A stretch of 64,000 nucleotides of DNA from Adineta vaga (taxonomy: Eukaryota; Animalia; Rotifera): contig CP075495.1 of assembly GCA_021613535.1 (NCBI GenBank), positions 806,001 to 870,000 on the forward strand. The letters run 5' to 3'. Shown here piece after piece: positions 253 to 58,083 of this stretch; within the stretch, counting starts at the first letter, position 1, and every line of letters begins with the position of its first letter. A program made the position numbers and the translations under genes. The notes beneath the pieces are model-generated. The model did not search any database and was not told the origin of the DNA. It saw only the letters and a program-made list of their open reading frames with translations.

Positions 253-742
253 TTAATCTTGTTTCCATGGAAAATATTTTCCTTCTGGATCTTCTTCTAA
301 AACTTGTTCAATAGCATCTGGACAAATAATATTTCCTGTATCACCATCAAATAAAAGTAATGTTGGTATTCCTGAAACTTTGAATTTTTTTGATATTCGT
401 TCTTTTTTTCTTCGTTCTTGATAATCTAATTTTAACCAAGGCATTTTTCGATAATATTCATCAAATGATCGTTCATCATGATCTGAACTAATAAAAATAA
501 TTTCGAAATTTTTTTCTTTCGAATATTTTTTATAAAAATCAATTAATGTCGGAGTAAATCCACAACATGGTGAACACCTAAAGAAAAGATATTAAACAAA
601 CTATATTAATCATAACTACATACCAAAGTGCACTAAAATAAAGACCAAAGATTTTACCACGATATTTCTTTTCACTAAAATCAACTAATTCATTTAATCT
701 GTTATAAACATGTCCTTCGAGGTATCTCCCGACACCGGCCAT
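253..742 (-). CDS. Nucleoredoxin/tryparedoxin-like thioredoxin, copy 1 (exons 742-624, 577-253)
   Basis: Spliced: MAGVGRYLEG...GLYFSALW|CSPCCGFTP...FEIIFISSDHDERSFDEYYRKMPWL...VSGIPTLLLFD...FPWKQD; 46-nt GT-AG intron splits the Trp codon of WCxxC. Confidence 0.9.
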
Positions 743-1057
743 GATCTTGTTGACAAAAAAGTAAAATATGATGATTTTCTTCTTTCGTTATGTTCTCACG
801 TCTTTTTTTTCTCGTCTCCTGCCTTGATCAAGTATAAGACGAGAGAGAAAAAACGAACGAACCATGATTTAGTTAGAGATATATTATTTGTCCTTCTTCA
901 TATTATTTTTTTATTCTATTCATTGAGGTGAATGATATTATTCAGAATAATTATATTGGATTTATCTTATCATTATTTTCTCTAAAATATTATTAAACAA
1001 TGTTTCAGTTATTTCTATTTATTCAATATTTTCTTTTATATAAAAATGATAAATAAA

Positions 1058-1568
1058 TTATTCATCAGATTTCCATGGAAAATCTTTTCCTTTTGGATCT
1101 TCATCACTAATTTTATCACATGCATCAGCACAAAGAACTTCTCCTGAATCTCCATCGAATAAAATTAATGTTGGATAACTTTCAATTTCCAATTTTTCTT
1201 CTACTTTTTCTTTTTTCTTCTGTTGTTTAAAATCAAATTTTAACCAAGGCATTTCTTTATAATAATCATTAAAAGATTCTTCATCTTCATCTGCACTCAT
1301 AAAAATAATTTCAAAATTTTTCTTTTCAGCATATGTTTTATAAAATTTGCTTAATTTCGGTGTAAATTCACAACATGGTCCACACCTATAAGAAATATTT
1401 CCTTAATTTTCAATTTCATATAAAGAAAAAAGAAAAGAACTTCACATACCATTGAGCACTGAAATATAAACCAATTGTTTTTCCTTGATATTCTTCATCA
1501 TTAAGATCGACTTTTACATTTGATTTATTGAAAATATTTCCATTTAAAAGCTTTGCAATACCAGCCAT
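1058..1568 (-). CDS. Nucleoredoxin/tryparedoxin-like thioredoxin, copy 2 (exons 1568-1450, 1385-1058)
   Basis: MAGIAKLLNG...GLYFSAQW|CGPCCEFTP...MPWL...FPWKSDE; intron at the same position as in copy 1. Confidence 0.9.
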
Positions 1569-1827
1569 GAAATTTCTTTTCGATTTCAATGTACCACTAA
1601 GACACTTCGAACATCGATAGTGAATGATATTTTATACTACACAGTTCCGCCCTTTCGTCATGATATAATAAATAAAAAAACAATTTTACTTATATTTTGA
1701 TACAGTTTGTTTTATGTGGGCGATGTTAATTTTATGGTCAAATGAAAATATATAGATTCAATAATATTTTTTTTTGATTTAATCGAATAAAAATATATCA
1801 ATCGATTTGATTTTATTTATTAAGATA

Positions 1828-2361
1828 TTATATTAAAATACATGATGATTCATCTTTTTTATCTTTTGAATCTTTCCATGGAAAATGTTCACCTTGTTTA
1901 TCACGATTTTGAATTTGATCTCTTGCATCATTACAAAGTATATCTCCTGTATCACCATCGATTAAAATTAATTTTGGAATACCATTGACTCCAAATTTAT
2001 TTTCTAATTCTTCTTTCTTCTCTTGATCTTTATAATCTAATTTTAACCAAGGCATATCTTTATAATATTCATCGAATGATTCTTCATCACTATCAGAACT
2101 TAAAAATATAATTTCAAAATTTTTATCTTCAGTATGTTTTTTATAAAATTCAATTAATTTTGGTGTAAATATACGACATGGTAGACACCTAGAATGAATG
2201 AAATGAACAGATTACATTATCTAAAGTACAAAATTAACGTACCAATGAGCACTGAAATAAAATCCAAAAACTTTTCCTTTGTATTTCTCATTATTCAGAT
2301 CAATTTCTTGATTTTCTTTATTCAAAATATGTCCATCGAATAATTTTGCAACACTTGCCAT
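1828..2361 (-). CDS. Nucleoredoxin/tryparedoxin-like thioredoxin, copy 3, with C-terminal CaaX (exons 2361-2243, 2188-1828)
   Basis: MASVAKLFDG...FYFSAHW|CLPCRIFTP...MPWL...VNGIPKL...ESSCILI*. Confidence 0.9.
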
Positions 2362-46420: not shown

Positions 46421-47514
46421 TACCGAAACGGCAAAAAATGAAGAGAATAAACCAAAAATAAAATATAATGATTCTTCTTGTGTTACATTCGTATTTCTTA
46501 TCAATTAGTATAAAAAATAGTCGAGAAATCATAAGACAAAAAATAATGTTGATTATGGAGTAATGTTACATCCATCGCTTATTTAGATTGCGATTTATTT
46601 TGTATTTAAACACCATCAACTGAGTCTAGGTAGATATCTTGTAGTCATTTATCGGCGTTCTTTCGATTTTCCACACTCGGCTGATCGATTGTCCGTCTCA
46701 CATCGATAATCTAATGTGAAACTAAATCTTTTCATTAATCGATGTTGTCGAACCTACTGGAAACTTCAAATAGAACATCAGATTAGAAACCATACTTATT
46801 GAAGAATAGTATTTTTCGATGAACATAGAGATAGGCTGCTCGGAATAATACAAATAGAGTTCGATGATGCTCACCTAGATTCAAATAAAACTAGTAATTT
46901 TACTGTAAGCAAAAGCTTCACTCAAAAGAGCATATTATATTTCACTCTCATCTATATCATCAAGATCAATTTGAAATGAAAATGTATAATGGATAGACTC
47001 AACTAAAAACGTGATTGAAGAATCATTGCTTTTCAGTATTTATCTATCGTACACAGTTTTTACCTGGATGAAAATCATTTATTCAAGTTCGATTCCACAA
47101 CAACATTACATGACATTCAGAATTCGATCGAAGATAAACAGGAGTTTCTATTATATCATTTGATTATATAATTGAATTCTATAATCCAGTTTATAAGAAA
47201 TATTTCAGACTTAGTGATACTTATTTACATCAACGACGTGCATTTTATTCTACTGAACAAATGATAGATACAGAATCAAAGACTACTATACCAAATCCTA
47301 TATTAAATTAAAAGTTTGTTGTTTTGAAATCAATAAAAACAATTACACATCCTCACTCACACCCTCAAGATAATATTCGTTTCTATTCGTTCAATATCTT
47401 GAAATAGGATGACTGCTCCAACTGCGTCGCAGTTACAATGCATTTCATCCCTGTAGTCATATTTCTCACACCATTCTTTCCCTACGATATCGATTCAATC
47501 TTTATTTTGATTAT

Positions 47515-48612
47515 TTATCCTTCAGTACAATCAATACTAAATTTAGTCCCATCAAAATCCATCGGTGTATCATCTCCATACATTTCTATTTGATTAATTA
47601 AAGTTTCAATTTGTTTTAATCTTTCAGTTGAATAATTTCTTTTGTCAAGAAAGTTCGTTTTATTCAGCAATTTTTTTGACCATGATAAATAATTTAAACT
47701 TTGTCGTGAATCTTCAATTGATGCAAATGCTTTTTGAACATAATAACTTGCAATATCTTTTGTTAATCGACTCAATAAATCTAATTCATGATCAAACATA
47801 AGAATTTTATCGATATAATTCAACGCCCAATCGATTTGAGTTAATAAATTACATGTAAAAACATAGATCGCATAAATATGTCTATTGTCGAATATTTGTG
47901 GTACAAGTCGACGACCAAGTGCACCTGTCGTAATCATAAAAATAGTTGTATTAGAATGTGATAATTGATTAATAAATTTCACACATGTATCGACTTTTGA
48001 AAATGTAAATAGAATCTGTTTTTGTTTATCATTCATTTGATAATCTTTCATTGTATTAGCAGAGAACGAACCGATTAAATTATCGATATCAAGATCTTTT
48101 CCATAAGAATAACGTGCAACTATATCGACTGAAGCTGTGGTATTAAAATAATGTTTTAATTGTCGATTATTTTGTGGATAACCAATATAAGCATCAAGCC
48201 AAATAATCACATGATCAGATATTGCTGGAAAGGAGTTGGATGGGTGATGTACATGATCATTCATGTAAAATTTACTTTCTTTTCTTGATCTGGATAATAA
48301 AATTTTTGTATCAAATTGAATTTTAGTAAATTGTTTATATAGAGAACGAATTCTTAATCTATAGAATCGAATAGTTTTAAAATAAGAATTCGATTGAATT
48401 TCATTAATATAAAATTTATCCAAAATAATATATTTATAAAATCGTGAATCGAAGATTTCTAATAGATATTGATTCATATCAATACAAAAATAATTACTAA
48501 TTAAATCATAAATAATTTCAACATCTAACATAAAAGATTCGATTTGTAATACAAATGTTTGATACATAAAATCAACGATAAATTCAATTGAGGAACATTT
48601 TTGTAAAGCCAT
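47515..48612 (-). CDS. PB1/beta-grasp-like N-domain plus pseudo-receiver domain protein (in-frame intron 48275-48225)
   Basis: N-term IEFIVDF...IYDLISNYF...LLEIFDSRFYKYIILD; receiver-like strands IIWLDAYIG, IFMITTGALG, IYAIYVFTC; helical C-terminus. Confidence 0.65.
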   Translation of the reverse strand: MALQKCSSIEFIVDFMYQTFVLQIESFMLDVEIIYDLISNYFCIDMNQYLLEIFDSRFYKYIILDKFYINEIQSNSYFKTIRFYRLRIRSLYKQFTKIQFDTKILLSRSRKESKFYMNDHVHHPSNSFPAISDHVIIWLDAYIGYPQNNRQLKHYFNTTASVDIVARYSYGKDLDIDNLIGSFSANTMKDYQMNDKQKQILFTFSKVDTCVKFINQLSHSNTTIFMITTGALGRRLVPQIFDNRHIYAIYVFTCNLLTQIDWALNYIDKILMFDHELDLLSRLTKDIASYYVQKAFASIEDSRQSLNYLSWSKKLLNKTNFLDKRNYSTERLKQIETLINQIEMYGDDTPMDFDGTKFSIDCTEG

Positions 48613-48904
48613 TTGTTTGTTAAAAATAAAACACGTTATGATAGAAAAACAAGAAAAAGAATATTCTCGTTTTTTTGTTGTTCTGTTCTCTATTGGAAAA
48701 TATTAGCCTTTTTTTCTTTCGTTCTTCCGTCTTATGTCGTCGATAGGATGTTTTTGCTTGTTGGAAATCTTTTTTCTTTTCTTTTTTTTACCTAAACGGC
48801 AGATATCTCTTGTTGGTATTTATTGATGAGATGAGAAATCTATATTCAATCTCATCTGAAGTATCAAGACAATCAGAACAAAAATTCTTTTCAAAAGTTC
48901 AACT

Positions 48905-51900
48905 ATGACTGATACGATAATTGAACATATCAATCATCCAAAACGTCTTTCATCTTCAGCTCCTAATTTAGTTAAATTTAATTCAACAACAACATTTAGT
49001 GATGTTCGAACTTATATTGAAAATGATAATGATGGTTTTTTAAAGGAATATGATTATGATGTTCAAATCTATAATAAAGACGTTGGCATGTATATCATCT
49101 TTAATGACAAATATATAGAACAATATCGTCCATTTGATTTAATTCTTCCAACAACAACAACAAAAGAACAATTAATGTCGAATTTAATTAAATTAAAAGT
49201 TATTTGGAACAAGAAAATTATGTCGGAAGCAATTTCAAGTATATTGAAGGAATTTATATTTAGAAAACAAACTTGTTCTTCGAATTTTTTAGATCCTTTA
49301 GGTGTATTTCCTTTGCCACAGATGACACCAAATCAAACTATGTCCAGTATTTTAGATGTATTCAATTCTGAAATGCCTCCAGTTATAAATTCATCTTTGA
49401 CAACGAATTTTATCTTATCACCATTATGTGATTTACTTGATGATCTTGAAGAAAATGATCGTGATGTTATGAATACAACAGACATAGGTAATATAATTAT
49501 GAAAGAAGATTTCATTTTTGTTAATATGTACAAATATTTTTCATTTAATTAGGATTTAATAATATCACTGATAGTAAGTCTTGACTTCAATAATCATTAT
49601 GATGATATCTTTCTTATGTACGATAGATGGTTCAGATACAACGTCTTTGCCTTATATTAGCAGTGGGACTGTAACTCTCTCTGACCTGCAAACAATAATG
49701 GAAATAAATGATTCAGATTCATCTATACCAACTCTCCTGTTGCTGATTGTATGTGATCTATTTTCGATGATCAACCATTATTTATGTTTGTTTTTAGATG
49801 TTGAAAAAAGTATTCAACAGACTGTCCAGGTAATTAAGCCAATACACAATCAATTAGATGTCAATATTGATGATATTTCATCAACATTCAGTAAATTGAA
49901 TTATGAAAATATTTCTTCAATCCTTCGTTCATATTTTAATATCTTTTCTAGAAGAATCAGCGTCGAGATTTATTCAATGTCGATTGAAAAATTTAGGCAA
50001 TACTTGTTATTTAAATGTTATTTTACAAATGTTCGCTCATACACCATTGTTAAAGGATTTGATTGTTCAAAGTAATCATCGTGAAACATGTACGTATATT
50101 TTTTCGATTTTACCAAAATGAAACTAAGTTGGTACTATTTAGGTCGACGAAATCCTGTTTGTGCCTTTTGTTTAATCGTACAAACATTAAAAGACATGTA
50201 TAAGATGTCTGAAACCAATCAAAATTATGTATATGCACCGAAATCGTTCCAAGATAAATTGGAACTATTGTCATCTCAATTCAAGGGAAAGATGCAACAA
50301 GATTGCCATGAACTTTTAATGAGTTTATTCAACAATATTGATGAACCATCGATTCTATCTAAAGCTTTTGGATTTTATACTCAACGTATTATTCGTTGTA
50401 ATCGCTGTAACAATGGATCAAATCCATCAGAACCTCAAATGATAATCGAATGTAATTTATCTAAAAAACCCTGTGACCTGGTCGATTGTCTGAAATAGTT
50501 ATTTTGACAAGGAATTGTTAAACAATGACGATGTATATATTGTCCAACATGTCAAAGTAAACAGAATGGGAATATTCGAACAGAAATCTGTTCATTACCA
50601 CCAATATTATTAGTCTCATTGAAACGATTTGTAAACCATCAAACAAAACTTGTTTCTCCAGTGACCTACAATGAAATCTTACATTTTGATGACAAATCGT
50701 TGATAGATGGTACTGATGAACAAAAGACATATCATCTCTATGCATTTATTATTCATATTGGAAATGATCTCGACAATGGTCATTATATTTGTTATGTTAG
50801 AAATGAATTGACCAATGAATGGTATGAAGCCAACGATGACTCGTTTCAGAAAGCTGAAAATGTATTTGACAAAAGGGAATCTGTTTATCTTTTATGTTAT
50901 ATACGATCAGATCTTAGTAAATTTGTGATTTTTGATCAATCGAATCTTACAAATACGTCAGGTATATAGCAATTGTCTAAGTTTTGTAGTTTTTTTAAAC
51001 TTATATTTTCAGATATACAAACCAAAGATCCATTGGATGAATTAAAGAAGAAAGTTAATTTTGATTTTTGTGAAGATATTTATCCTTATCAAAGACGTCA
51101 AGGAAAATGTGATGTCTTTGGAGAATTGGGTTCAAAACAGTAATATATTCTCTATGGATACGGAGTTATTACAAAGAAATGTTGATTTTTTATTTAGACT
51201 GAAACAACCAAGTTTTCTCTGGATCAAAGGAGAATTAAGTAAAGTACGCAAACCTAGTTATCCAAAATTAGAGGTAAGCTATTTTATTGATTACATTGAT
51301 AAAACAATCTTTTACTCTAGATAAGCATTCCTGTTGACTTTCAAAAATATAAATGGCTATTAAAAATAACCGTTGTTACAGAAATGAGTGGAAAGAATGG
51401 TATTTATTATTTACAACATGAGAAAAAATTCTTGGGAGATGATTCTCGTCGATTTGATGGTCCATTACTTAATTCAATCGAATTCGAAATAATATTTGAA
51501 AATTCGGGAAAACTAAGTTTCGTACCACTTTTTCATTCCAAACATCAAATAGAGAAGGTATTCGGAAAGGTTGGTACGAAAATCAGTTCACCCGAAGATT
51601 CTTTAGACGATATTTATCAGTAAGATGAAGTTTACTGAAACTATAAGTAATAAAATCTTTTTTTTCTCTGATATAGATTGCTTTTATGTGTTCTTAATGA
51701 AGGAAATTTAGTTGAAGCAAAAATTCTTGCATTAATACCATTTTATAATTCTTTTATGAAAAAATTTGTTTCAATGGAAAATTCCAGCGTATTAGTAACT
51801 GCGAAAAATCAAGGAATTGATTTAAAAAATTTCCAATTATTTTGTGAACTTTATATTGAAGATCATCGATTAAAATATTGTATTTCAAAATGTGCATTAC

Positions 51901-52172
51901 AAGGTTAGTAAGACGTTCTTTGCATACGATTAAAATATTGGTATATTACAGATAATGATGGCACGAAAAAGCAATCAAAACGAAAAATAGAAGGATCAAC
52001 AAAAGAAATTCGAAAGAAACGGAAGTCGTCGAATTCTGAAAAAAGTAAACAAGATGAAAATGAAGAAATTGAAATTGAAGATGGCGTATATCCAGTACCA
52101 AGGTACGATGATTACAAATACGAAAAAATCTTTCTATTTCTTCTTCCATTTAGTGATGATTCAAATGAATAA
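48905..52172 (+). CDS. PB1-like - USP deubiquitinase - Rel-homology-like domain - NLS fusion protein, multi-exon
   Basis: USP Cys box LKNLGNTCYLNVILQ (Cys codon 50005), QQDCHE, His box HIGNDLDNGHYICYVR, WYEANDD; exons 51013-51139, 51198-51273, 51321-51619, 51677-51903, 51952-52102, 52154-52172 give the RHD-like region and KRK...RKKRK; two compensating indels at about 50495-50541. Confidence 0.75.
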
Positions 52173-52481
52173 TAATCTTTTAAATCTTTTTTACGTCAAA
52201 TTGTGATGATCGAGTGTCGTTTTTTTTCCTTCTGTTCAAGTCTTATTATTAGTAATTCGAATAAAATCATCATAAAGGTTTTCTTCTACATAATTTTAAA
52301 TCAAAATAATCACTTGAAACATCTATCAACAAATCTTATGATTCATTCAGTAAACGAAATTCGATCTATTTTTTCTGCAAATAAATAGAATTTGTAATGT
52401 GATCATGCAATAAACTGTTTCTTTCATTTATACGGCAGAGAAAAAACATATTCTGAAAAAAGATCAAATCATTACTTGATC

Positions 52482-54695
52482 ATGTCGCATCAACGAAATT
52501 TCAAAAATTTACCTGTTGAAATTTTCCATATTCTATTTGATTACTTTTCAACACAAGAAATTCTTCGTACTTTTCTCAATATTAGTGATTATTTAAATGA
52601 TATTTTAAATGGTTATTCAAATTGGTCATTGAATTTCAAATCGATTTCACGAGATGATTTTGATTTTATTTGTCATCAAATTCAACCAGAAAAAGTCATT
52701 TCATTAACAATTTCTGATGATTGTGATACACCAGGTCAATCGGAATTATTCTTTTCTCGATTTCAACTTGAACAATTTGTTCATTTACGATGTTTGAGAT
52801 TGATAAATATTGAATTTGAATCATTAGAACATATTTTCACCAATTTACATAAACTAAAACAAATGAAATCGTTTTCATTTCATATTAATTCTATTACATA
52901 TAAATATTATGATAAGAAAATTAATTATTGGAGTAAATTAAAACGACTAAAGCCAACGATTCTCCATTCGTATGCACAAGTCATACCTCATTTAGATCGA
53001 TTAGAAACAGATAATCATACTGTTATATCACGTTTACCATCAATAAATCTTCGTTCTTTAAAAATATGTTTATTTTCTGCTAAGAAACTGAGAAGTATTA
53101 TGAATAAATTACCATATCTTAATTCACTTGATGTATCCCTTCAATTGACAAATGGAAATGATATGAATATTGATTTTGAATCATCTAAATTGACTCGACT
53201 TCACTTAAAAATCTATGGTGAGTTTGTCCCTATATGAGATTTTGTTTTATTCAAGTAATACTAATCTATTTCAGGTCATCAAGTGCAAGTATCGATGAAT
53301 CAAATGGAACAATTCCTTTCAAAATTCTCTTGTTTAAAATATCTTAAATTGATTTTAAAGGGTAAGGATGATCTTGTTGATGGATATCGATGGGAAATGT
53401 TAACAAATTCACTTGTTACATTCGACTTCAAATTTCATGTCGGTTATCGTGTATCACACGATTCTTTTCAAACATTGTTTTGGTTAGAACACAAACATTG
53501 GTATGTTGATTCCCAAAAGAATTGTTTATTCACAATACCTTATTTCTATCCTTCTGATATTACTATTAATACATATTCGTATCAAGCAGTTAACAAAACG
53601 GCTATAAAATATGTAACTTCAATAACCATTGATGATATTCCTAAAGGAATATCTTCTTATTTTACACATGTGAAAAAGTTGTGTCTTAATCGGTCATTTA
53701 CTCATCAAGACATTTTCTTTCTTGTGTCATTGAAACATGTAGAATCTTTATTATTATTTTCAATAACTGATCTATTAAAATTTCAACCCTATGAAATAAC
53801 ACTTCCTAAGTTATCTGAATTAATTATTGAAAATACAATCAAATTCGATGATATTATGCAAATGAAAACTACTACACAAATAAAACAAATTCAAATATTA
53901 AATGTATCAATAGATCATGTCAATTCACATTTCATCTTAAAAGGATTATTTTATTGTTATCCTCATGTCAAACATCTTCGAGTACAATTACCACCTTTTA
54001 TTTCCGTGAAGACATTCATTGATAGTCTTAATATATTTACATATACATCAAATATTTCCTTTTTATCACTTGATCGTTATCCAGATTTCGATTATGTTAT
54101 TGAAAACTCTAAACGACGTGAATTGTCATATCGACTTAAACGAAGTAAATTCTCATGTGGACTTAAACGATCATTCAACAATCTTATTGGAAAAGATTCT
54201 CATTTTTGGATCGCACCACAGGTAAAGCTTTTTTTTCTCCTAATAGAATTCAATGCTTTGTTTTCTATTTAAAAGCACTTACAATCATATTCAACTGTAC
54301 AATGGCCATCAGGATTCGAAAATTCTCGACTAATTATAGAATCTTTTATTTCTGAAGTCGAATATTCAGAACCTTTGTTACAAATACTACGTGCAATAGC
54401 ATTCATTTGTATAATATCTATGCCTTACTTCTGCAAGTTTAATCCTACAGTTGTTCCATTTTCATTCAATTATTTCATTCTGAAGATATTTATAACATTT
54501 TGGTATGTTATTTTATTCATACTTGCATTAATGAACTTTCTTATGTGTAAAAGAATTTTTAATTGGATATGTTATAAGTTACCTTCACGAATTCGCTCGT
54601 TTATTCCAGTTTTTTGTATTTTTATATGTTTTGCATGTATTTTTAATCGTGATCTATTTACGATCATCCGTCAACTATTTGATTTTGTTTTTTAA
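52482..54695 (+). CDS. F-box/LRR-like protein with C-terminal TM segments, copy 1 (3 exons)
   Basis: F-box LPVEIFHILFDYF; Leu-rich repeats; DGYRWE; hydrophobic last exon. Confidence 0.8.
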
Positions 54696-55952: not shown

Positions 55953-58083
55953 ATGTCACATCAACGAAATTTCAAAACTTTACCTGTTGAAATTTTCCAT
56001 ATTCTATTTGATTACTTTTCAACACAAGAAATTCTTCGTACTTTCCTTAATATTAGTGATTATTTAAATGCTGTTTTAAATGGTTATTCAAATTGGTCAT
56101 TGAATTTCAAATCGATTTCACGAGATGAATTTGATTTTATTTGTCATCAAATTCAACCAGAAAAGGTCATTTCATTAACAATTTCTGATGATTGTGATAC
56201 ACCAGGTCAATCGGAATTATTCTTTTCTCGATTTCAACTTGAACAATTTGTTCATTTACGATGTTTGAGATTGATAAATATTGAATCTGAATCATTAGAA
56301 CATACTTTCACCAATTTACATAAACTAAAACAGATGAAGTCATTTTCATTGAATAGAATATCTATTGATTCTATTGAATCAAAACGATTAGAGCAAATTA
56401 TCTTTGATTCTTTTGTGAAAGTCTTCCCTAATCTATATCGTTTAGCGATCGGTCATAGTTCATTTCTAGAACATTTATCAATACCAAGAGTTCGTTACTT
56501 GAAAATAACAATGTGTTCTACCGATAAACTAAAAACTATTCTGAATGATTCGCCATGTCTTCAATCGTTATGCACAAGTGTATACTTAGAAAATAAAAAT
56601 GATATGAATATTGATTTTGAATCATCTAAATTGACTCGACTTCACTTAAAAATCTATGGTGAGTTTGTCTCTATATGAGATTTTGTTTTATTCAAGTGAT
56701 ACTAATCTATTTCAGGTCATCAAGTGCAAGTATCAATGAACCAAATGGAACAATTCCTTTCAAAATTCTCTTGTTTAAAATATCTTAGATTGATTCTAAA
56801 GGGTAAGGATGATCTTGTTGATGGATATCGATGGGAAATGTTAACAAATTCACTTGTTACATTCAATTTCTACTTTGACATTGGCCATCCTGTAATACTA
56901 AATTCATTTCATAACTTTTATTGGTTAGAAGATAAACATTGGCATGTTCGTTATCAAGATGGTATTGTATTCACGACGCCTTACTTTTATCTTATTCATA
57001 TGAATATAGTTGATCAAAAATATCAATTGTATTCTAAAATGGCTATAAAATATGTAACTTCAATGACGATTTATGATATTCCTAAAGGACTATGTTCTTA
57101 TTTTACGCATATCAAGAAGTTATCTCTTACTGATTCATTTTTGCGTCAACAGATTTCTCCTCTACTTTCATTTGAACATGTAGAATCTTTATCGTTAATT
57201 TCATTCAATGATTTATTAGAATTTCAACCCTATGAAACAACACTTCCTAAGTTATCTAAATTAATCATCAAAGATGCAATCAAATTCGTTGATATTATAC
57301 AAATGAAAACTACACAAATAAAACAGATTCAAATCTTGAAAGTAACAATTGAACATGAAGATTTGATATTAGAAGGGTTATTTTTTTGTTTTCCTCTTAT
57401 TAAATATCTTCAATTATCTTTTCAAAAATCGACTTCTGGAAACAACATAATTCATACTATTGATACATTTATTTATACATCAAAATTTTCAATTTCTTCT
57501 CCTGATGATAAGCTCGATTTCAGTTATGTGGTGAAAAACTCTAAACGACTTCAACCAAGTGAATTCACATATCGAGTTAAACAATCAAACAGACCTCAAT
57601 CGATAGTTTGTCATTGGTGGATTGTGCCGAAGGTAAAATGTTTCATTAGATAATAAATCAAATCATATTTTATTCTTTTTAAAGACTTTTCAATCATATT
57701 CAGCTGTACCATGGCCGTCGAGCTTCAAATATTTTCATCGATATACAAAATTTTTTTTTTCTCAAATAGAAAATTCAATATTTGGTAAAATCACTTTGAC
57801 GCTTTCCAGCCAGTATTGTTCGATATCAATTATGGCGTCTTTAATGTCATTTCTCGATATTAACTCAATATTAATTCAATATTTCAACCCTATAAATTGT
57901 GTATTAATATGGTTTAGTATTCTAATACTTTTTATAATCATGACCAATTCTTTATTCAAAAGTGCTATTGCTTGGATATCTTACAAATTCCCTCCTTCAT
58001 TTCGACCGATTATTCCAGTCGTTACTATCTTATATGGATTTTGCAATTTGTTATTTTTATCGAAATCTACTCCGATCAGCTGA
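55953..58083 (+). CDS. F-box/LRR-like protein with C-terminal TM segments, copy 2 (3 exons)
   Basis: Tandem duplicate of copy 1, offset about 3.47 kb, same exon structure. Confidence 0.8.

What the first reader, a model, noticed from the sequence alone, without database searches (positions are those of the whole stretch)
51013..52172. Hidden divergent Rel-homology (NF-kB-like) DNA-binding domain fused behind a deubiquitinase
Seen only after splicing six short exons: FCEDIYPYQRRQGKCD...WIKGELSKVRKPSYPKLEISIP...LKITVVTEMSGKNGIYYLQHEKKFLG...YQLLLCVLNEGNL...GIDLKNFQLFCELYIED...CISKCALQDN, then bipartite KRK...RKKRK. Known: NF-kB p50 reads LPGASSEKNKKSYPQVKI...[21 protein letters not shown] and MDLSVVRLMFTAF, with an RxRYxCE DNA loop and an NLS after the RHD. 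The motifs occur in the same order. No IPT dimerisation domain is visible and the DNA-contact loop is altered (RRQGKCD). NF-kB signalling is normally controlled by separate DUBs (CYLD, A20); a USP-RHD fusion in one chain is an architecture I do not recognise.
Basis: partly seen in the sequence, partly recalled or inferred. Interest (0 to 1): 0.85.

Follow-up and report, generated by a model that had tools for sequence, protein, structure and literature searches.

The report
Deubiquitinase fused to NF-kB-like domain
A rotifer (Adineta vaga) gene joins a ubiquitin-removing enzyme to a very divergent copy of the DNA-reading half of NF-kB in one transcript, a layout I found in no paper, although the NF-kB likeness rests on a predicted structure only.

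Summary
One RNA-like contig links the USP exon to them.

The window lies on Adineta vaga chromosome 2. Full-length orthologues exist in A. ricciae. Exon-conserved copies exist in two Rotaria species and one unnamed bdelloid.

Every sequence-level test for a Rel homology domain (RHD) failed: Pfam, PDB sequence and profile searches, and the ESM Atlas feature search.

An AlphaFold2 model built on a 13-row alignment has moderate confidence (pLDDT 60.8, core 70-86). Its structural neighbours are:
- Foldseek: the 24 best PDB hits are all NF-kB/Rel N-terminal domains.
- ESM Atlas: the best shape matches are rotifer-only clusters, one carrying PF00554.

No dimerisation domain follows the module. The recognition loop is altered. 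A basic NLS-like tail follows.

Caveats: this haplotype has two 1-bp indels and three stops inside the USP, while another allele reads through. The gene evolves fast (dN/dS about 0.7-0.9). The scan has noted DUB-Rel-like genes elsewhere in this genome.

Verdict: a real, novel architecture. Homology to the RHD is probable, not proven.

The parts
48905..49531 (+). First coding exon: N-terminal region of about 210 aa with no Pfam family
   Evidence: ORF. No Pfam hit. Colinear with the N-termini of the A. ricciae orthologues P0006 and P0008. RNA-like contigs cover 48844-49217. The 3' border of the exon is not confirmed.
49963..50961 (+). USP (PF00443) catalytic domain: Cys-box exon up to 50089, intron 50090-50142, then the rest including the His box
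   Evidence: Pfam UCH: E 5e-9 (Cys box), E 2.5e-9 and E 2.2e-22. Catalytic Cys (NTCY), His (GHY) and the ND motif are visible. Intron 50090-50142 is seen as an RNA joint.
50492..50538 (+). Frame-shifted stretch inside the USP finger region of this haplotype, with stops TAG 50496, TGA 50505 and TGA 50526
   Evidence: A DNA contig of run X6 (depth 57 against about 95 in total, so probably one allele) lacks one base at 50492 and has an extra G after 50538. That gives an open frame which matches the orthologues.
51013..51139 (+). E1: first strand and the altered 'recognition loop' region, with an invariant RR pair
   Evidence: RNA joints 50961/51013 and 51139/51198. Conserved in all seven bdelloid sequences. 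This stretch has low confidence in the model.
51198..51273 (+). E2: WIKGE...SYPKL motif exon
   Evidence: RNA joints. 71% identity to Rotaria. The phase-0 intron after YPxxx is at the same place as in a divergent A. vaga RHD gene that weakly matches PF00554.
51321..51619 (+). E3: central beta strands of the Rel-like domain
   Evidence: RNA joints. 100% identical to P0001 510-608. hhalign against the second exon of the RHD-like gene array gives P 0.011.
51513..51608 (+). A. vaga-specific 32-aa insertion within E3 (loop)
   Evidence: Absent from A. ricciae, both Rotaria species and the Logan species in alignment A5. Transcribed as exon.
51677..51903 (+). E4: helix plus the last strands of the Rel-like domain
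   Evidence: RNA joints. 42-45% identity to the other bdelloids. This is the best-modelled part, pLDDT 74-86.
51952..52102 (+). E5: basic/acidic tail with a bipartite NLS-like cluster at 51966-52025
   Evidence: RNA joints. A basic cluster lies at the same place in A. ricciae and both Rotaria species.
52154..52172 (+). E6: last six codons and the stop
   Evidence: RNA joint 52102/52154 in X2. The A. ricciae proteins end with the same residues. The public model P0001 instead runs on into the next genes, which the RNA does not support.

Best explanation
The gene at 48905-52172 (+) of this Adineta vaga window encodes a bdelloid-rotifer-specific ubiquitin-specific protease. Its C-terminal 230 or so residues form a very divergent, stand-alone version of the N-terminal (DNA-reading) half of the Rel homology region. 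No IPT dimerisation half follows it. It ends in a basic nuclear-localisation-like tail.

Inferred mechanism: the tail takes the protein into the nucleus. The Rel-like module then serves as the targeting domain, binding either DNA or chromatin as a monomer, or a Rel-family or IkB-like partner. The USP removes ubiquitin from proteins at that site.

Shown: the splicing, the single transcript, the USP catalytic motifs, and conservation of the architecture and exon structure across bdelloids. Predicted: the Rel-like fold. Inferred: nuclear location, DNA or partner binding, and the substrate. The family evolves fast and is often broken, as immune-type gene families are.
For: - Splicing and linkage: GT..AG joints appear only in the RNA-like runs, and one contig runs from the USP exon through E1 and E2 into E3.
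- Species and public model: A. vaga UJR24549.1.
- Orthologues with the same architecture: A. ricciae P0006 and P0008 (803 and 800 aa), with a conserved head-to-head neighbour gene. Rotaria sp. Silwood1 and Silwood2 and a Logan contig have the same exon borders.
- USP: Pfam UCH E 6e-48 on P0006, with intact Cys, His and Asp motifs.
- Fold: AF2 model pLDDT 60.8, pTM 0.61, core 70-86.
- Foldseek: the top 24 PDB hits are all Rel homology N-domains, best E 1.3e-3, probability 1.00.
- Atlas shape search: three rotifer-only clusters at TM 0.57-0.61, one with PF00554 in 14% of members, and an arthropod NF-kB cluster at TM 0.53.
- Link to divergent RHD-like genes of the same genome: same intron position and phase, and hhalign P 0.011, colinear.
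- A basic cluster directly follows the domain in all species.
Against: - No sequence method links the domain to RHD: Pfam at E up to 10, PDB phmmer and profile searches at E up to 10, and Atlas features.
- Only one of five AF2 models reached pLDDT 60. The first attempt, with 3 rows, gave 35.5.
- The loop that would read DNA is poorly modelled. It keeps only an RR pair, not RxRYxCE.
- dN/dS between the two A. ricciae copies is 0.86 in this domain and 0.65 in the USP, which is close to relaxed constraint.
- This haplotype's USP has three in-frame stops.
- The DNA run X6 also shows an extra A after 50870 that would break the frame before the tail. The RNA contig shows no net indel there.
Confidence: 0.6

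Rival explanations
1. The tail is a generic Ig-like beta-sandwich, for example a substrate- or partner-binding domain of a USP. It has no common ancestry with Rel proteins. The Rel-like model arises because AlphaFold2 fitted a shallow alignment to a fold it knows.
Against: Two different aligners both rank Rel N-domains first, with no other fold among them, and over 134-150 residues against about 100 for generic sandwiches. The helix after the fifth strand and the whole extent of the RHD N-domain (p65 residues 19-190) are covered. The best Atlas matches are rotifer clusters that include PF00554 carriers. The intron position is shared, and hhalign gives P 0.011 to RHD-like genes of the same genome.
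Confidence: 0.27
2. The locus is a decaying gene. The tail is no longer under selection in A. vaga, and the transcript is non-functional and subject to nonsense-mediated decay.
For: There are three in-frame stops in the USP of this haplotype. dN/dS is 0.65-0.86 between the A. ricciae copies. A reverse-transcriptase-bearing insertion lies inside the USP region of Rotaria sp. Silwood1. The A. steineri model stops after E1, and no later exons were found.
Against: The other allele in DNA run X6 is open across the indels. Open exons with conserved borders and motifs persist in Adineta, two Rotaria species and another bdelloid. Both A. ricciae copies are full length. The gene is transcribed and correctly spliced.
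Confidence: 0.1
3. USP and tail are separate genes or alternative products. The fusion is an artefact of annotation or contig assembly.
For: The public model P0001 is plainly chimeric: it runs on into the downstream F-box/LRR genes. The contigs laid are assemblies, not single molecules.
Against: Intron 50962-51012 is spliced in frame from the USP His-box exon into E1 in an RNA-like contig. There is no stop or start signal between them. Independent gene models in A. ricciae and Rotaria join the same parts.
Confidence: 0.03

Closest known systems
NF-kB/Rel N-terminal Rel homology domain (Pfam PF00554; RelA, RelB, c-Rel, p50, p52, Dorsal/Gambif1)
   Different: There is no significant sequence match. 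The recognition loop is not RxRYxCE. No IPT/TIG dimerisation domain follows, so dimeric kB-site binding is not expected. The domain sits behind a USP instead of at the N-terminus.
Divergent RHD-like gene arrays of A. vaga (for example C2:4.30-4.33 Mb; earlier scan notes s1-494275, s1-494321, s1-508285)
   Same: Same genome. One exon weakly matches PF00554 (E 0.036). The intron after the YPxxx motif has the same position and phase. The next exon aligns colinearly at P 0.011. According to the earlier notes, some have only the DNA-reading half and a degenerate DUB-like head.
   Different: An HMM of this family does not find the array exons. Here the head is a USP with a complete catalytic triad, and the gene is single-copy, not in an array.
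Separate DUB regulators of NF-kB (CYLD, A20, USP7, USP11, USP15 etc.)
   Same: A deubiquitinase is functionally coupled to Rel proteins.
   Different: In those systems the DUB and the Rel protein are separate polypeptides. None carries a Rel homology fold. No homology beyond the USP domain was tested or seen. The nearest solved USPs by sequence are USP36 and Ubp8-type.
p53/Cep-1, NFAT/TonEBP and other p53-like beta-sandwich DNA-binding domains
   Different: They rank below all NF-kB-class chains. They lack the helix placement and the motif order seen here.

Membership tests
Rel homology DNA-binding domain (PF00554) | Significant sequence or profile match to the family model or to solved RHD chains | tested here: not met
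   There is no PF00554 hit at E up to 10 on the exons, on the public spliced protein part, on the orthologues or on the paralogues. No RHD chain appears at E up to 10 with phmmer or with profiles A3, A5 and A6.
Rel homology DNA-binding domain (PF00554) | RHD N-domain fold, with RHD chains as nearest structural neighbours | tested here: met
Rel homology DNA-binding domain (PF00554) | Recognition loop RxRYxCE that contacts the kB site | tested here: not met
   The alignment shows an invariant E-Q/H-R-R followed by a variable stretch. The Cys-Asp five residues later is present in Adineta and Rotaria Silwood2 but lost in Rotaria Silwood1 and the Logan species. The loop is modelled at pLDDT below 50.
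Rel homology region (NF-kB/NFAT) | IPT/TIG dimerisation domain (PF16179) after the N-domain | tested here: not met
   Only about 50 residues of charged tail follow the domain before the stop. There is no PF16179 or TIG hit, and none in the six-frame genome search.
Rel homology region (NF-kB/NFAT) | Sequence-specific DNA binding | not testable with these tools
   This needs EMSA, PBM or SELEX. The domain is basic: pI 8.6 in A. vaga and 9.1 in A. ricciae.
Ubiquitin-specific protease (PF00443, peptidase C19) | Match to the UCH model over the curated cut-off | tested here: met
   Window exons score 36.5, 37.6 and 80.3 bits against a cut-off of 23.9. Orthologue P0006 scores 164 bits over profile positions 1-254.
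Ubiquitin-specific protease (PF00443, peptidase C19) | Catalytic Cys box, His box and Asp/Asn present | tested here: met
   The N-T-C-Y, G-H-Y and N-D-D motifs are read directly in the translation and in P0006.
Ubiquitin-specific protease (PF00443, peptidase C19) | Uninterrupted reading frame in this window | tested here: not met
   Stops at 50496, 50505 and 50526 lie between two 1-bp indels. A second allele in DNA run X6 is open.

The most novel reading that the evidence does not exclude
Bdelloid rotifers have built a lineage-specific signalling family in which a monomeric Rel-derived reading module is welded to a deubiquitinase. This gene would be the member that still has a working USP. The module delivers the enzyme to kB-like DNA sites or to Rel or IkB partners, so that recognition and ubiquitin removal happen in one polypeptide. 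This is a fast-evolving, possibly immune or stress-linked, alternative to the CYLD/A20-type control of NF-kB.
Probability: 0.25. Interest if true: 0.85.

Novelty: new variant of a known kind. Interest (0 to 1): 0.66.

Why it matters
Rel homology domains are known as N-terminal, dimeric DNA readers that separate enzymes regulate through ubiquitin. A Rel-type N-domain without its dimerisation half, placed behind a catalytically complete USP and conserved across bdelloid genera, would be a new use of this fold.

It would also give a direct handle on two questions. One is how an animal group without recognisable canonical NF-kB organises Rel-type signalling. The other is where the degenerate DUB-like heads come from that other scan notes report on Rel-like genes of the same genome.

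Separately, the public annotation of this locus is shown to be a chimera of three genes.

Tried and rejected
- Pfam on single exons, on the public spliced part and on orthologues gave nothing but UCH.
- PDB sequence and profile searches gave only chance hits: HA2, Fab and a racemase.
- ESM Atlas feature search gave no usable hit.
- The exhaustive phmmer with E3 returned a Calx-beta adhesin (P0002) and a repeat protein (P0003). I rejected both as repeat-summed or low-complexity chance matches.
- The search for homologous proteins with the tail alone found nothing. It worked only with a USP-plus-tail alignment.
- The metagenome scan for relatives found none.
I left that step out.
- The first AF2 run (A. 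vaga target, 3 rows) gave pLDDT 35.5 and I discarded it.
- PF00554 and PF16179 six-frame searches of the genome found nothing, but the controls did not ring either.
- An HMM of this family does not detect the RHD-like array exons, and the first array exon is not significant in hhalign.
- The idea from another first-stage note, that the head-to-head neighbour shares an N-terminal domain with this gene, got no BLASTP support (E 0.6).
The joined tail was used only as a part of the public protein (P0001:442-735) or of the orthologues, by reference.

Full report
**Where the window is**

The window is AT-rich (26-34% GC) and has introns of about 50 bp. It lies at C2:806001-870000 of a 100.8-Mb genome in six contigs. 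The public protein that matches it exactly is Adineta vaga UJR24549.1, I4U23_005924.

**The observation**

A three-frame translation and the sequence itself show a multi-exon gene on the + strand starting at 48905. It has:
- a USP Cys box near 49990;
- the rest of the USP up to 50961;
- six short exons: 51013-51139, 51198-51273, 51321-51619, 51677-51903, 51952-52102 and 52154-52172.

All six have GT..AG borders and matching phases.

I laid the contigs of four public runs on 47400-52400. All six introns that border or separate these exons, plus 50090-50142, appear as exact GT..AG joints in the three RNA-like runs. None appears in the DNA run. One 669-nt contig (X2 record 10) goes from the USP exon (50635-50957) through E1 and E2 into E3. 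The tail therefore belongs to the USP transcript.

The public gene model (P0001, 1294 aa) is a chimera:
- It skips part of the USP.
- It runs from E5 into the downstream F-box/LRR-like genes.

The RNA joint 52102/52154 supports E6 and the stop at 52172 instead. So does the identical C-terminal end of the A. ricciae proteins.

**A defect in this haplotype**

Between about 50492 and 50538 the USP frame is shifted, with stops at 50496, 50505 and 50526. A contig of DNA run X6 has depth 57 against about 95 in total there, so it is probably one allele. It lacks one base at 50492 and has an extra G after 50538. With those two changes the stretch reads as a normal USP zinc-ribbon region that aligns with the orthologues.

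X6 also shows an extra A after 50870. That would end the frame before the tail. The RNA-like contig over that place has no net indel, and the window's frame is the one conserved in A. ricciae. I take this as an error or a variant and leave it open.

**Relatives**

- An exhaustive phmmer search with E3 against 1.8 billion representatives found only the A. vaga protein and a Rotaria sp. Silwood1 fragment.
- A profile of USP plus tail then found two full-length A. ricciae proteins (803 and 800 aa), a truncated A. steineri model, fragments from Rotaria Silwood1 and Silwood2, and a Logan contig.
- I fetched the loci and read the exons by coordinates. E1 to E4 (E5 too in both Rotaria) are present with the same borders in both Rotaria species and in the Logan species, at 31-50% identity.
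- The divergently transcribed neighbour gene is conserved next to both A. ricciae copies at 49% identity. These are therefore orthologues, although the USP-plus-tail region is only 36-37% identical.
- A. vaga has a private 32-residue insertion in E3, at 51513-51608.
- In the A. vaga genome the gene is single-copy.
- A profile search finds two distant paralogues of the tail domain, on C6 and C1. The C6 paralogue has no USP within 1.5 kb. The domain is therefore a module of its own.

**Is it a Rel homology domain? Sequence tests**

By sequence, no. The following searches all failed to find RHD:
- Pfam at E up to 10 on exons, the public spliced part, orthologues and paralogues;
- phmmer and three profiles against all PDB chains at E up to 10;
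- the ESM Atlas feature search.

**Is it a Rel homology domain? Structure tests**

The joined tail was used only by reference to parts of public proteins.

- The first AlphaFold2 run (A. vaga, 3 rows) was useless, with pLDDT 35.5.
- The second run used A. ricciae P0006:552-770 as target with 13 rows. It gave one model with pLDDT 60.8 and pTM 0.61. The core reaches 70-86 and the stretch around the putative recognition loop is below 50. The other four models scored 35-46.
- Foldseek against 350,542 PDB chains: the first 24 hits are all Rel homology N-domains (RelA, p52, p50, c-Rel, RelB, Gambif1). The best has E 1.3e-3 and probability 1.00. p53-family chains, interleaved with further NF-kB chains and NFAT, and CP2 follow.
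- The Atlas shape search puts three rotifer-only clusters first (TM by query 0.57-0.61). One of them has PF00554 in 14% of its members. An arthropod NF-kB cluster scores 0.53.

The match covers the whole RHD N-domain (p65 residues 19-190). Mapping the model's elements to the sequence gives the order that I know from Rel proteins: a strand, then the loop, then the Y-P-x-x-K/E-I strand, the V-T strand, the C-V strand followed by a helix, and the D-L...L strand. That last comparison rests on my own knowledge, not on a tool.

**A second line of evidence**

An earlier scan note (s1-494275) pointed to an array of divergent RHD-like genes 3.43 Mb further along the same contig. I fetched it.
- One first exon weakly matches PF00554 (E 0.036, profile positions 1-45).
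- An ankyrin ORF lies beside it.
- That gene has a phase-0 intron directly after its Y-P-T-I-R, and the next exon starts with I-P. This is the same place and phase as E2|E3 here.
- hhalign of the tail alignment against eight array copies of that second exon gives P 0.011, with the alignment where expected. The first exon is not significant, though it is colinear.

This is weak, but it is independent of AlphaFold.

**What is missing**

- No IPT/TIG domain follows.
- The genome search for PF16179 and PF00554 found nothing, though its controls were silent too.
- The RxRYxCE loop is replaced by a stretch that keeps an invariant RR. A Cys and an acidic residue five positions after the first Arg are kept in Adineta and Rotaria Silwood2; the Logan species has neither and Rotaria Silwood1 keeps only the acidic residue.

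**What follows the domain**

A basic cluster follows the domain directly in every species. It is bipartite in Adineta and SV40-like in Rotaria Silwood1.

**Evolution**

I compared the two A. ricciae copies codon by codon, exon by exon. dN/dS is 0.65 in the USP, 0.86 in the Rel-like domain and 0.72 overall (Nei-Gojobori).

Breakage is also frequent:
- the broken A. vaga haplotype;
- an insertion bearing reverse-transcriptase sequence inside the Rotaria Silwood1 USP;
- the truncated A. steineri gene.

This is a fast, birth-and-death type of family. Against pure decay stand the open exons, the conserved borders and the conserved motifs across two bdelloid families, together with transcription.

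**Reading**

The most likely explanation (0.6) is a nuclear USP whose targeting module descends from the Rel N-domain. It would work as a monomer on DNA, chromatin or a Rel or IkB-like partner. Three rivals remain:
- an unrelated Ig-like sandwich that AlphaFold shaped like RHD (0.27);
- a decaying gene (0.1);
- a false fusion (0.03).

**Literature and the scan**

I found no paper on rotifer Rel homology domains. A. vaga immunity is described as uncharted in PMC6043800. The scan itself has noted DUB-like heads on Rel-like genes elsewhere in this genome (s1-494321 and others). I did not check those notes, except for the array used above.

Noticed in passing
window 47515-48612 (-): A 365-aa single-exon ORF is transcribed divergently, about 290 bp from the USP gene start. 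It has no Pfam family and is covered by RNA-like contigs. It is conserved head-to-head beside both A. ricciae orthologues at 49% identity. BLASTP shows no shared N-terminal domain with the USP gene (E 0.6).
   Followed up: partly
window 52476-54272 and 55953-56678 (+): These are tandem near-identical F-box-like/LRR-like genes; the first 100 residues of the two copies are almost the same. There is a weak LRR_14 hit (ORFs). The public model P0001 wrongly fuses the first of them to the USP gene.
   Followed up: partly
window 50492, 50538, 50870, 49148: Allelic or assembly indels appear against DNA run X6: -1 at 50492, +G after 50538, +A after 50870, and an in-frame +CAA after 49148 that is also seen in an RNA-like contig. 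The first two decide whether the USP is open.
   Followed up: partly
L015 (G000:C6:5964456-5967677), about 640-2000 (+): A paralogue of the Rel-like module lies behind a different N-terminal region of about 110 aa, with no USP. A second paralogue is on C1:4772366-4772536 (L017).
   Followed up: partly
L018, L023, L019, L024 (G000:C2:4299000-4332000): An array of divergent RHD-like genes lies on the minus strand. At least eight copies of the second exon are present. One first exon hits PF00554 at E 0.036, and an ankyrin-repeat ORF lies at L019:9367-9957.
   Followed up: partly
L008 3614-8552 (Rotaria sp. Silwood1): An insertion of about 5 kb with reverse-transcriptase-like coding sequence lies between the USP Cys box and the rest of the USP. 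The public model P0005 fuses part of it to the USP.
   Followed up: no
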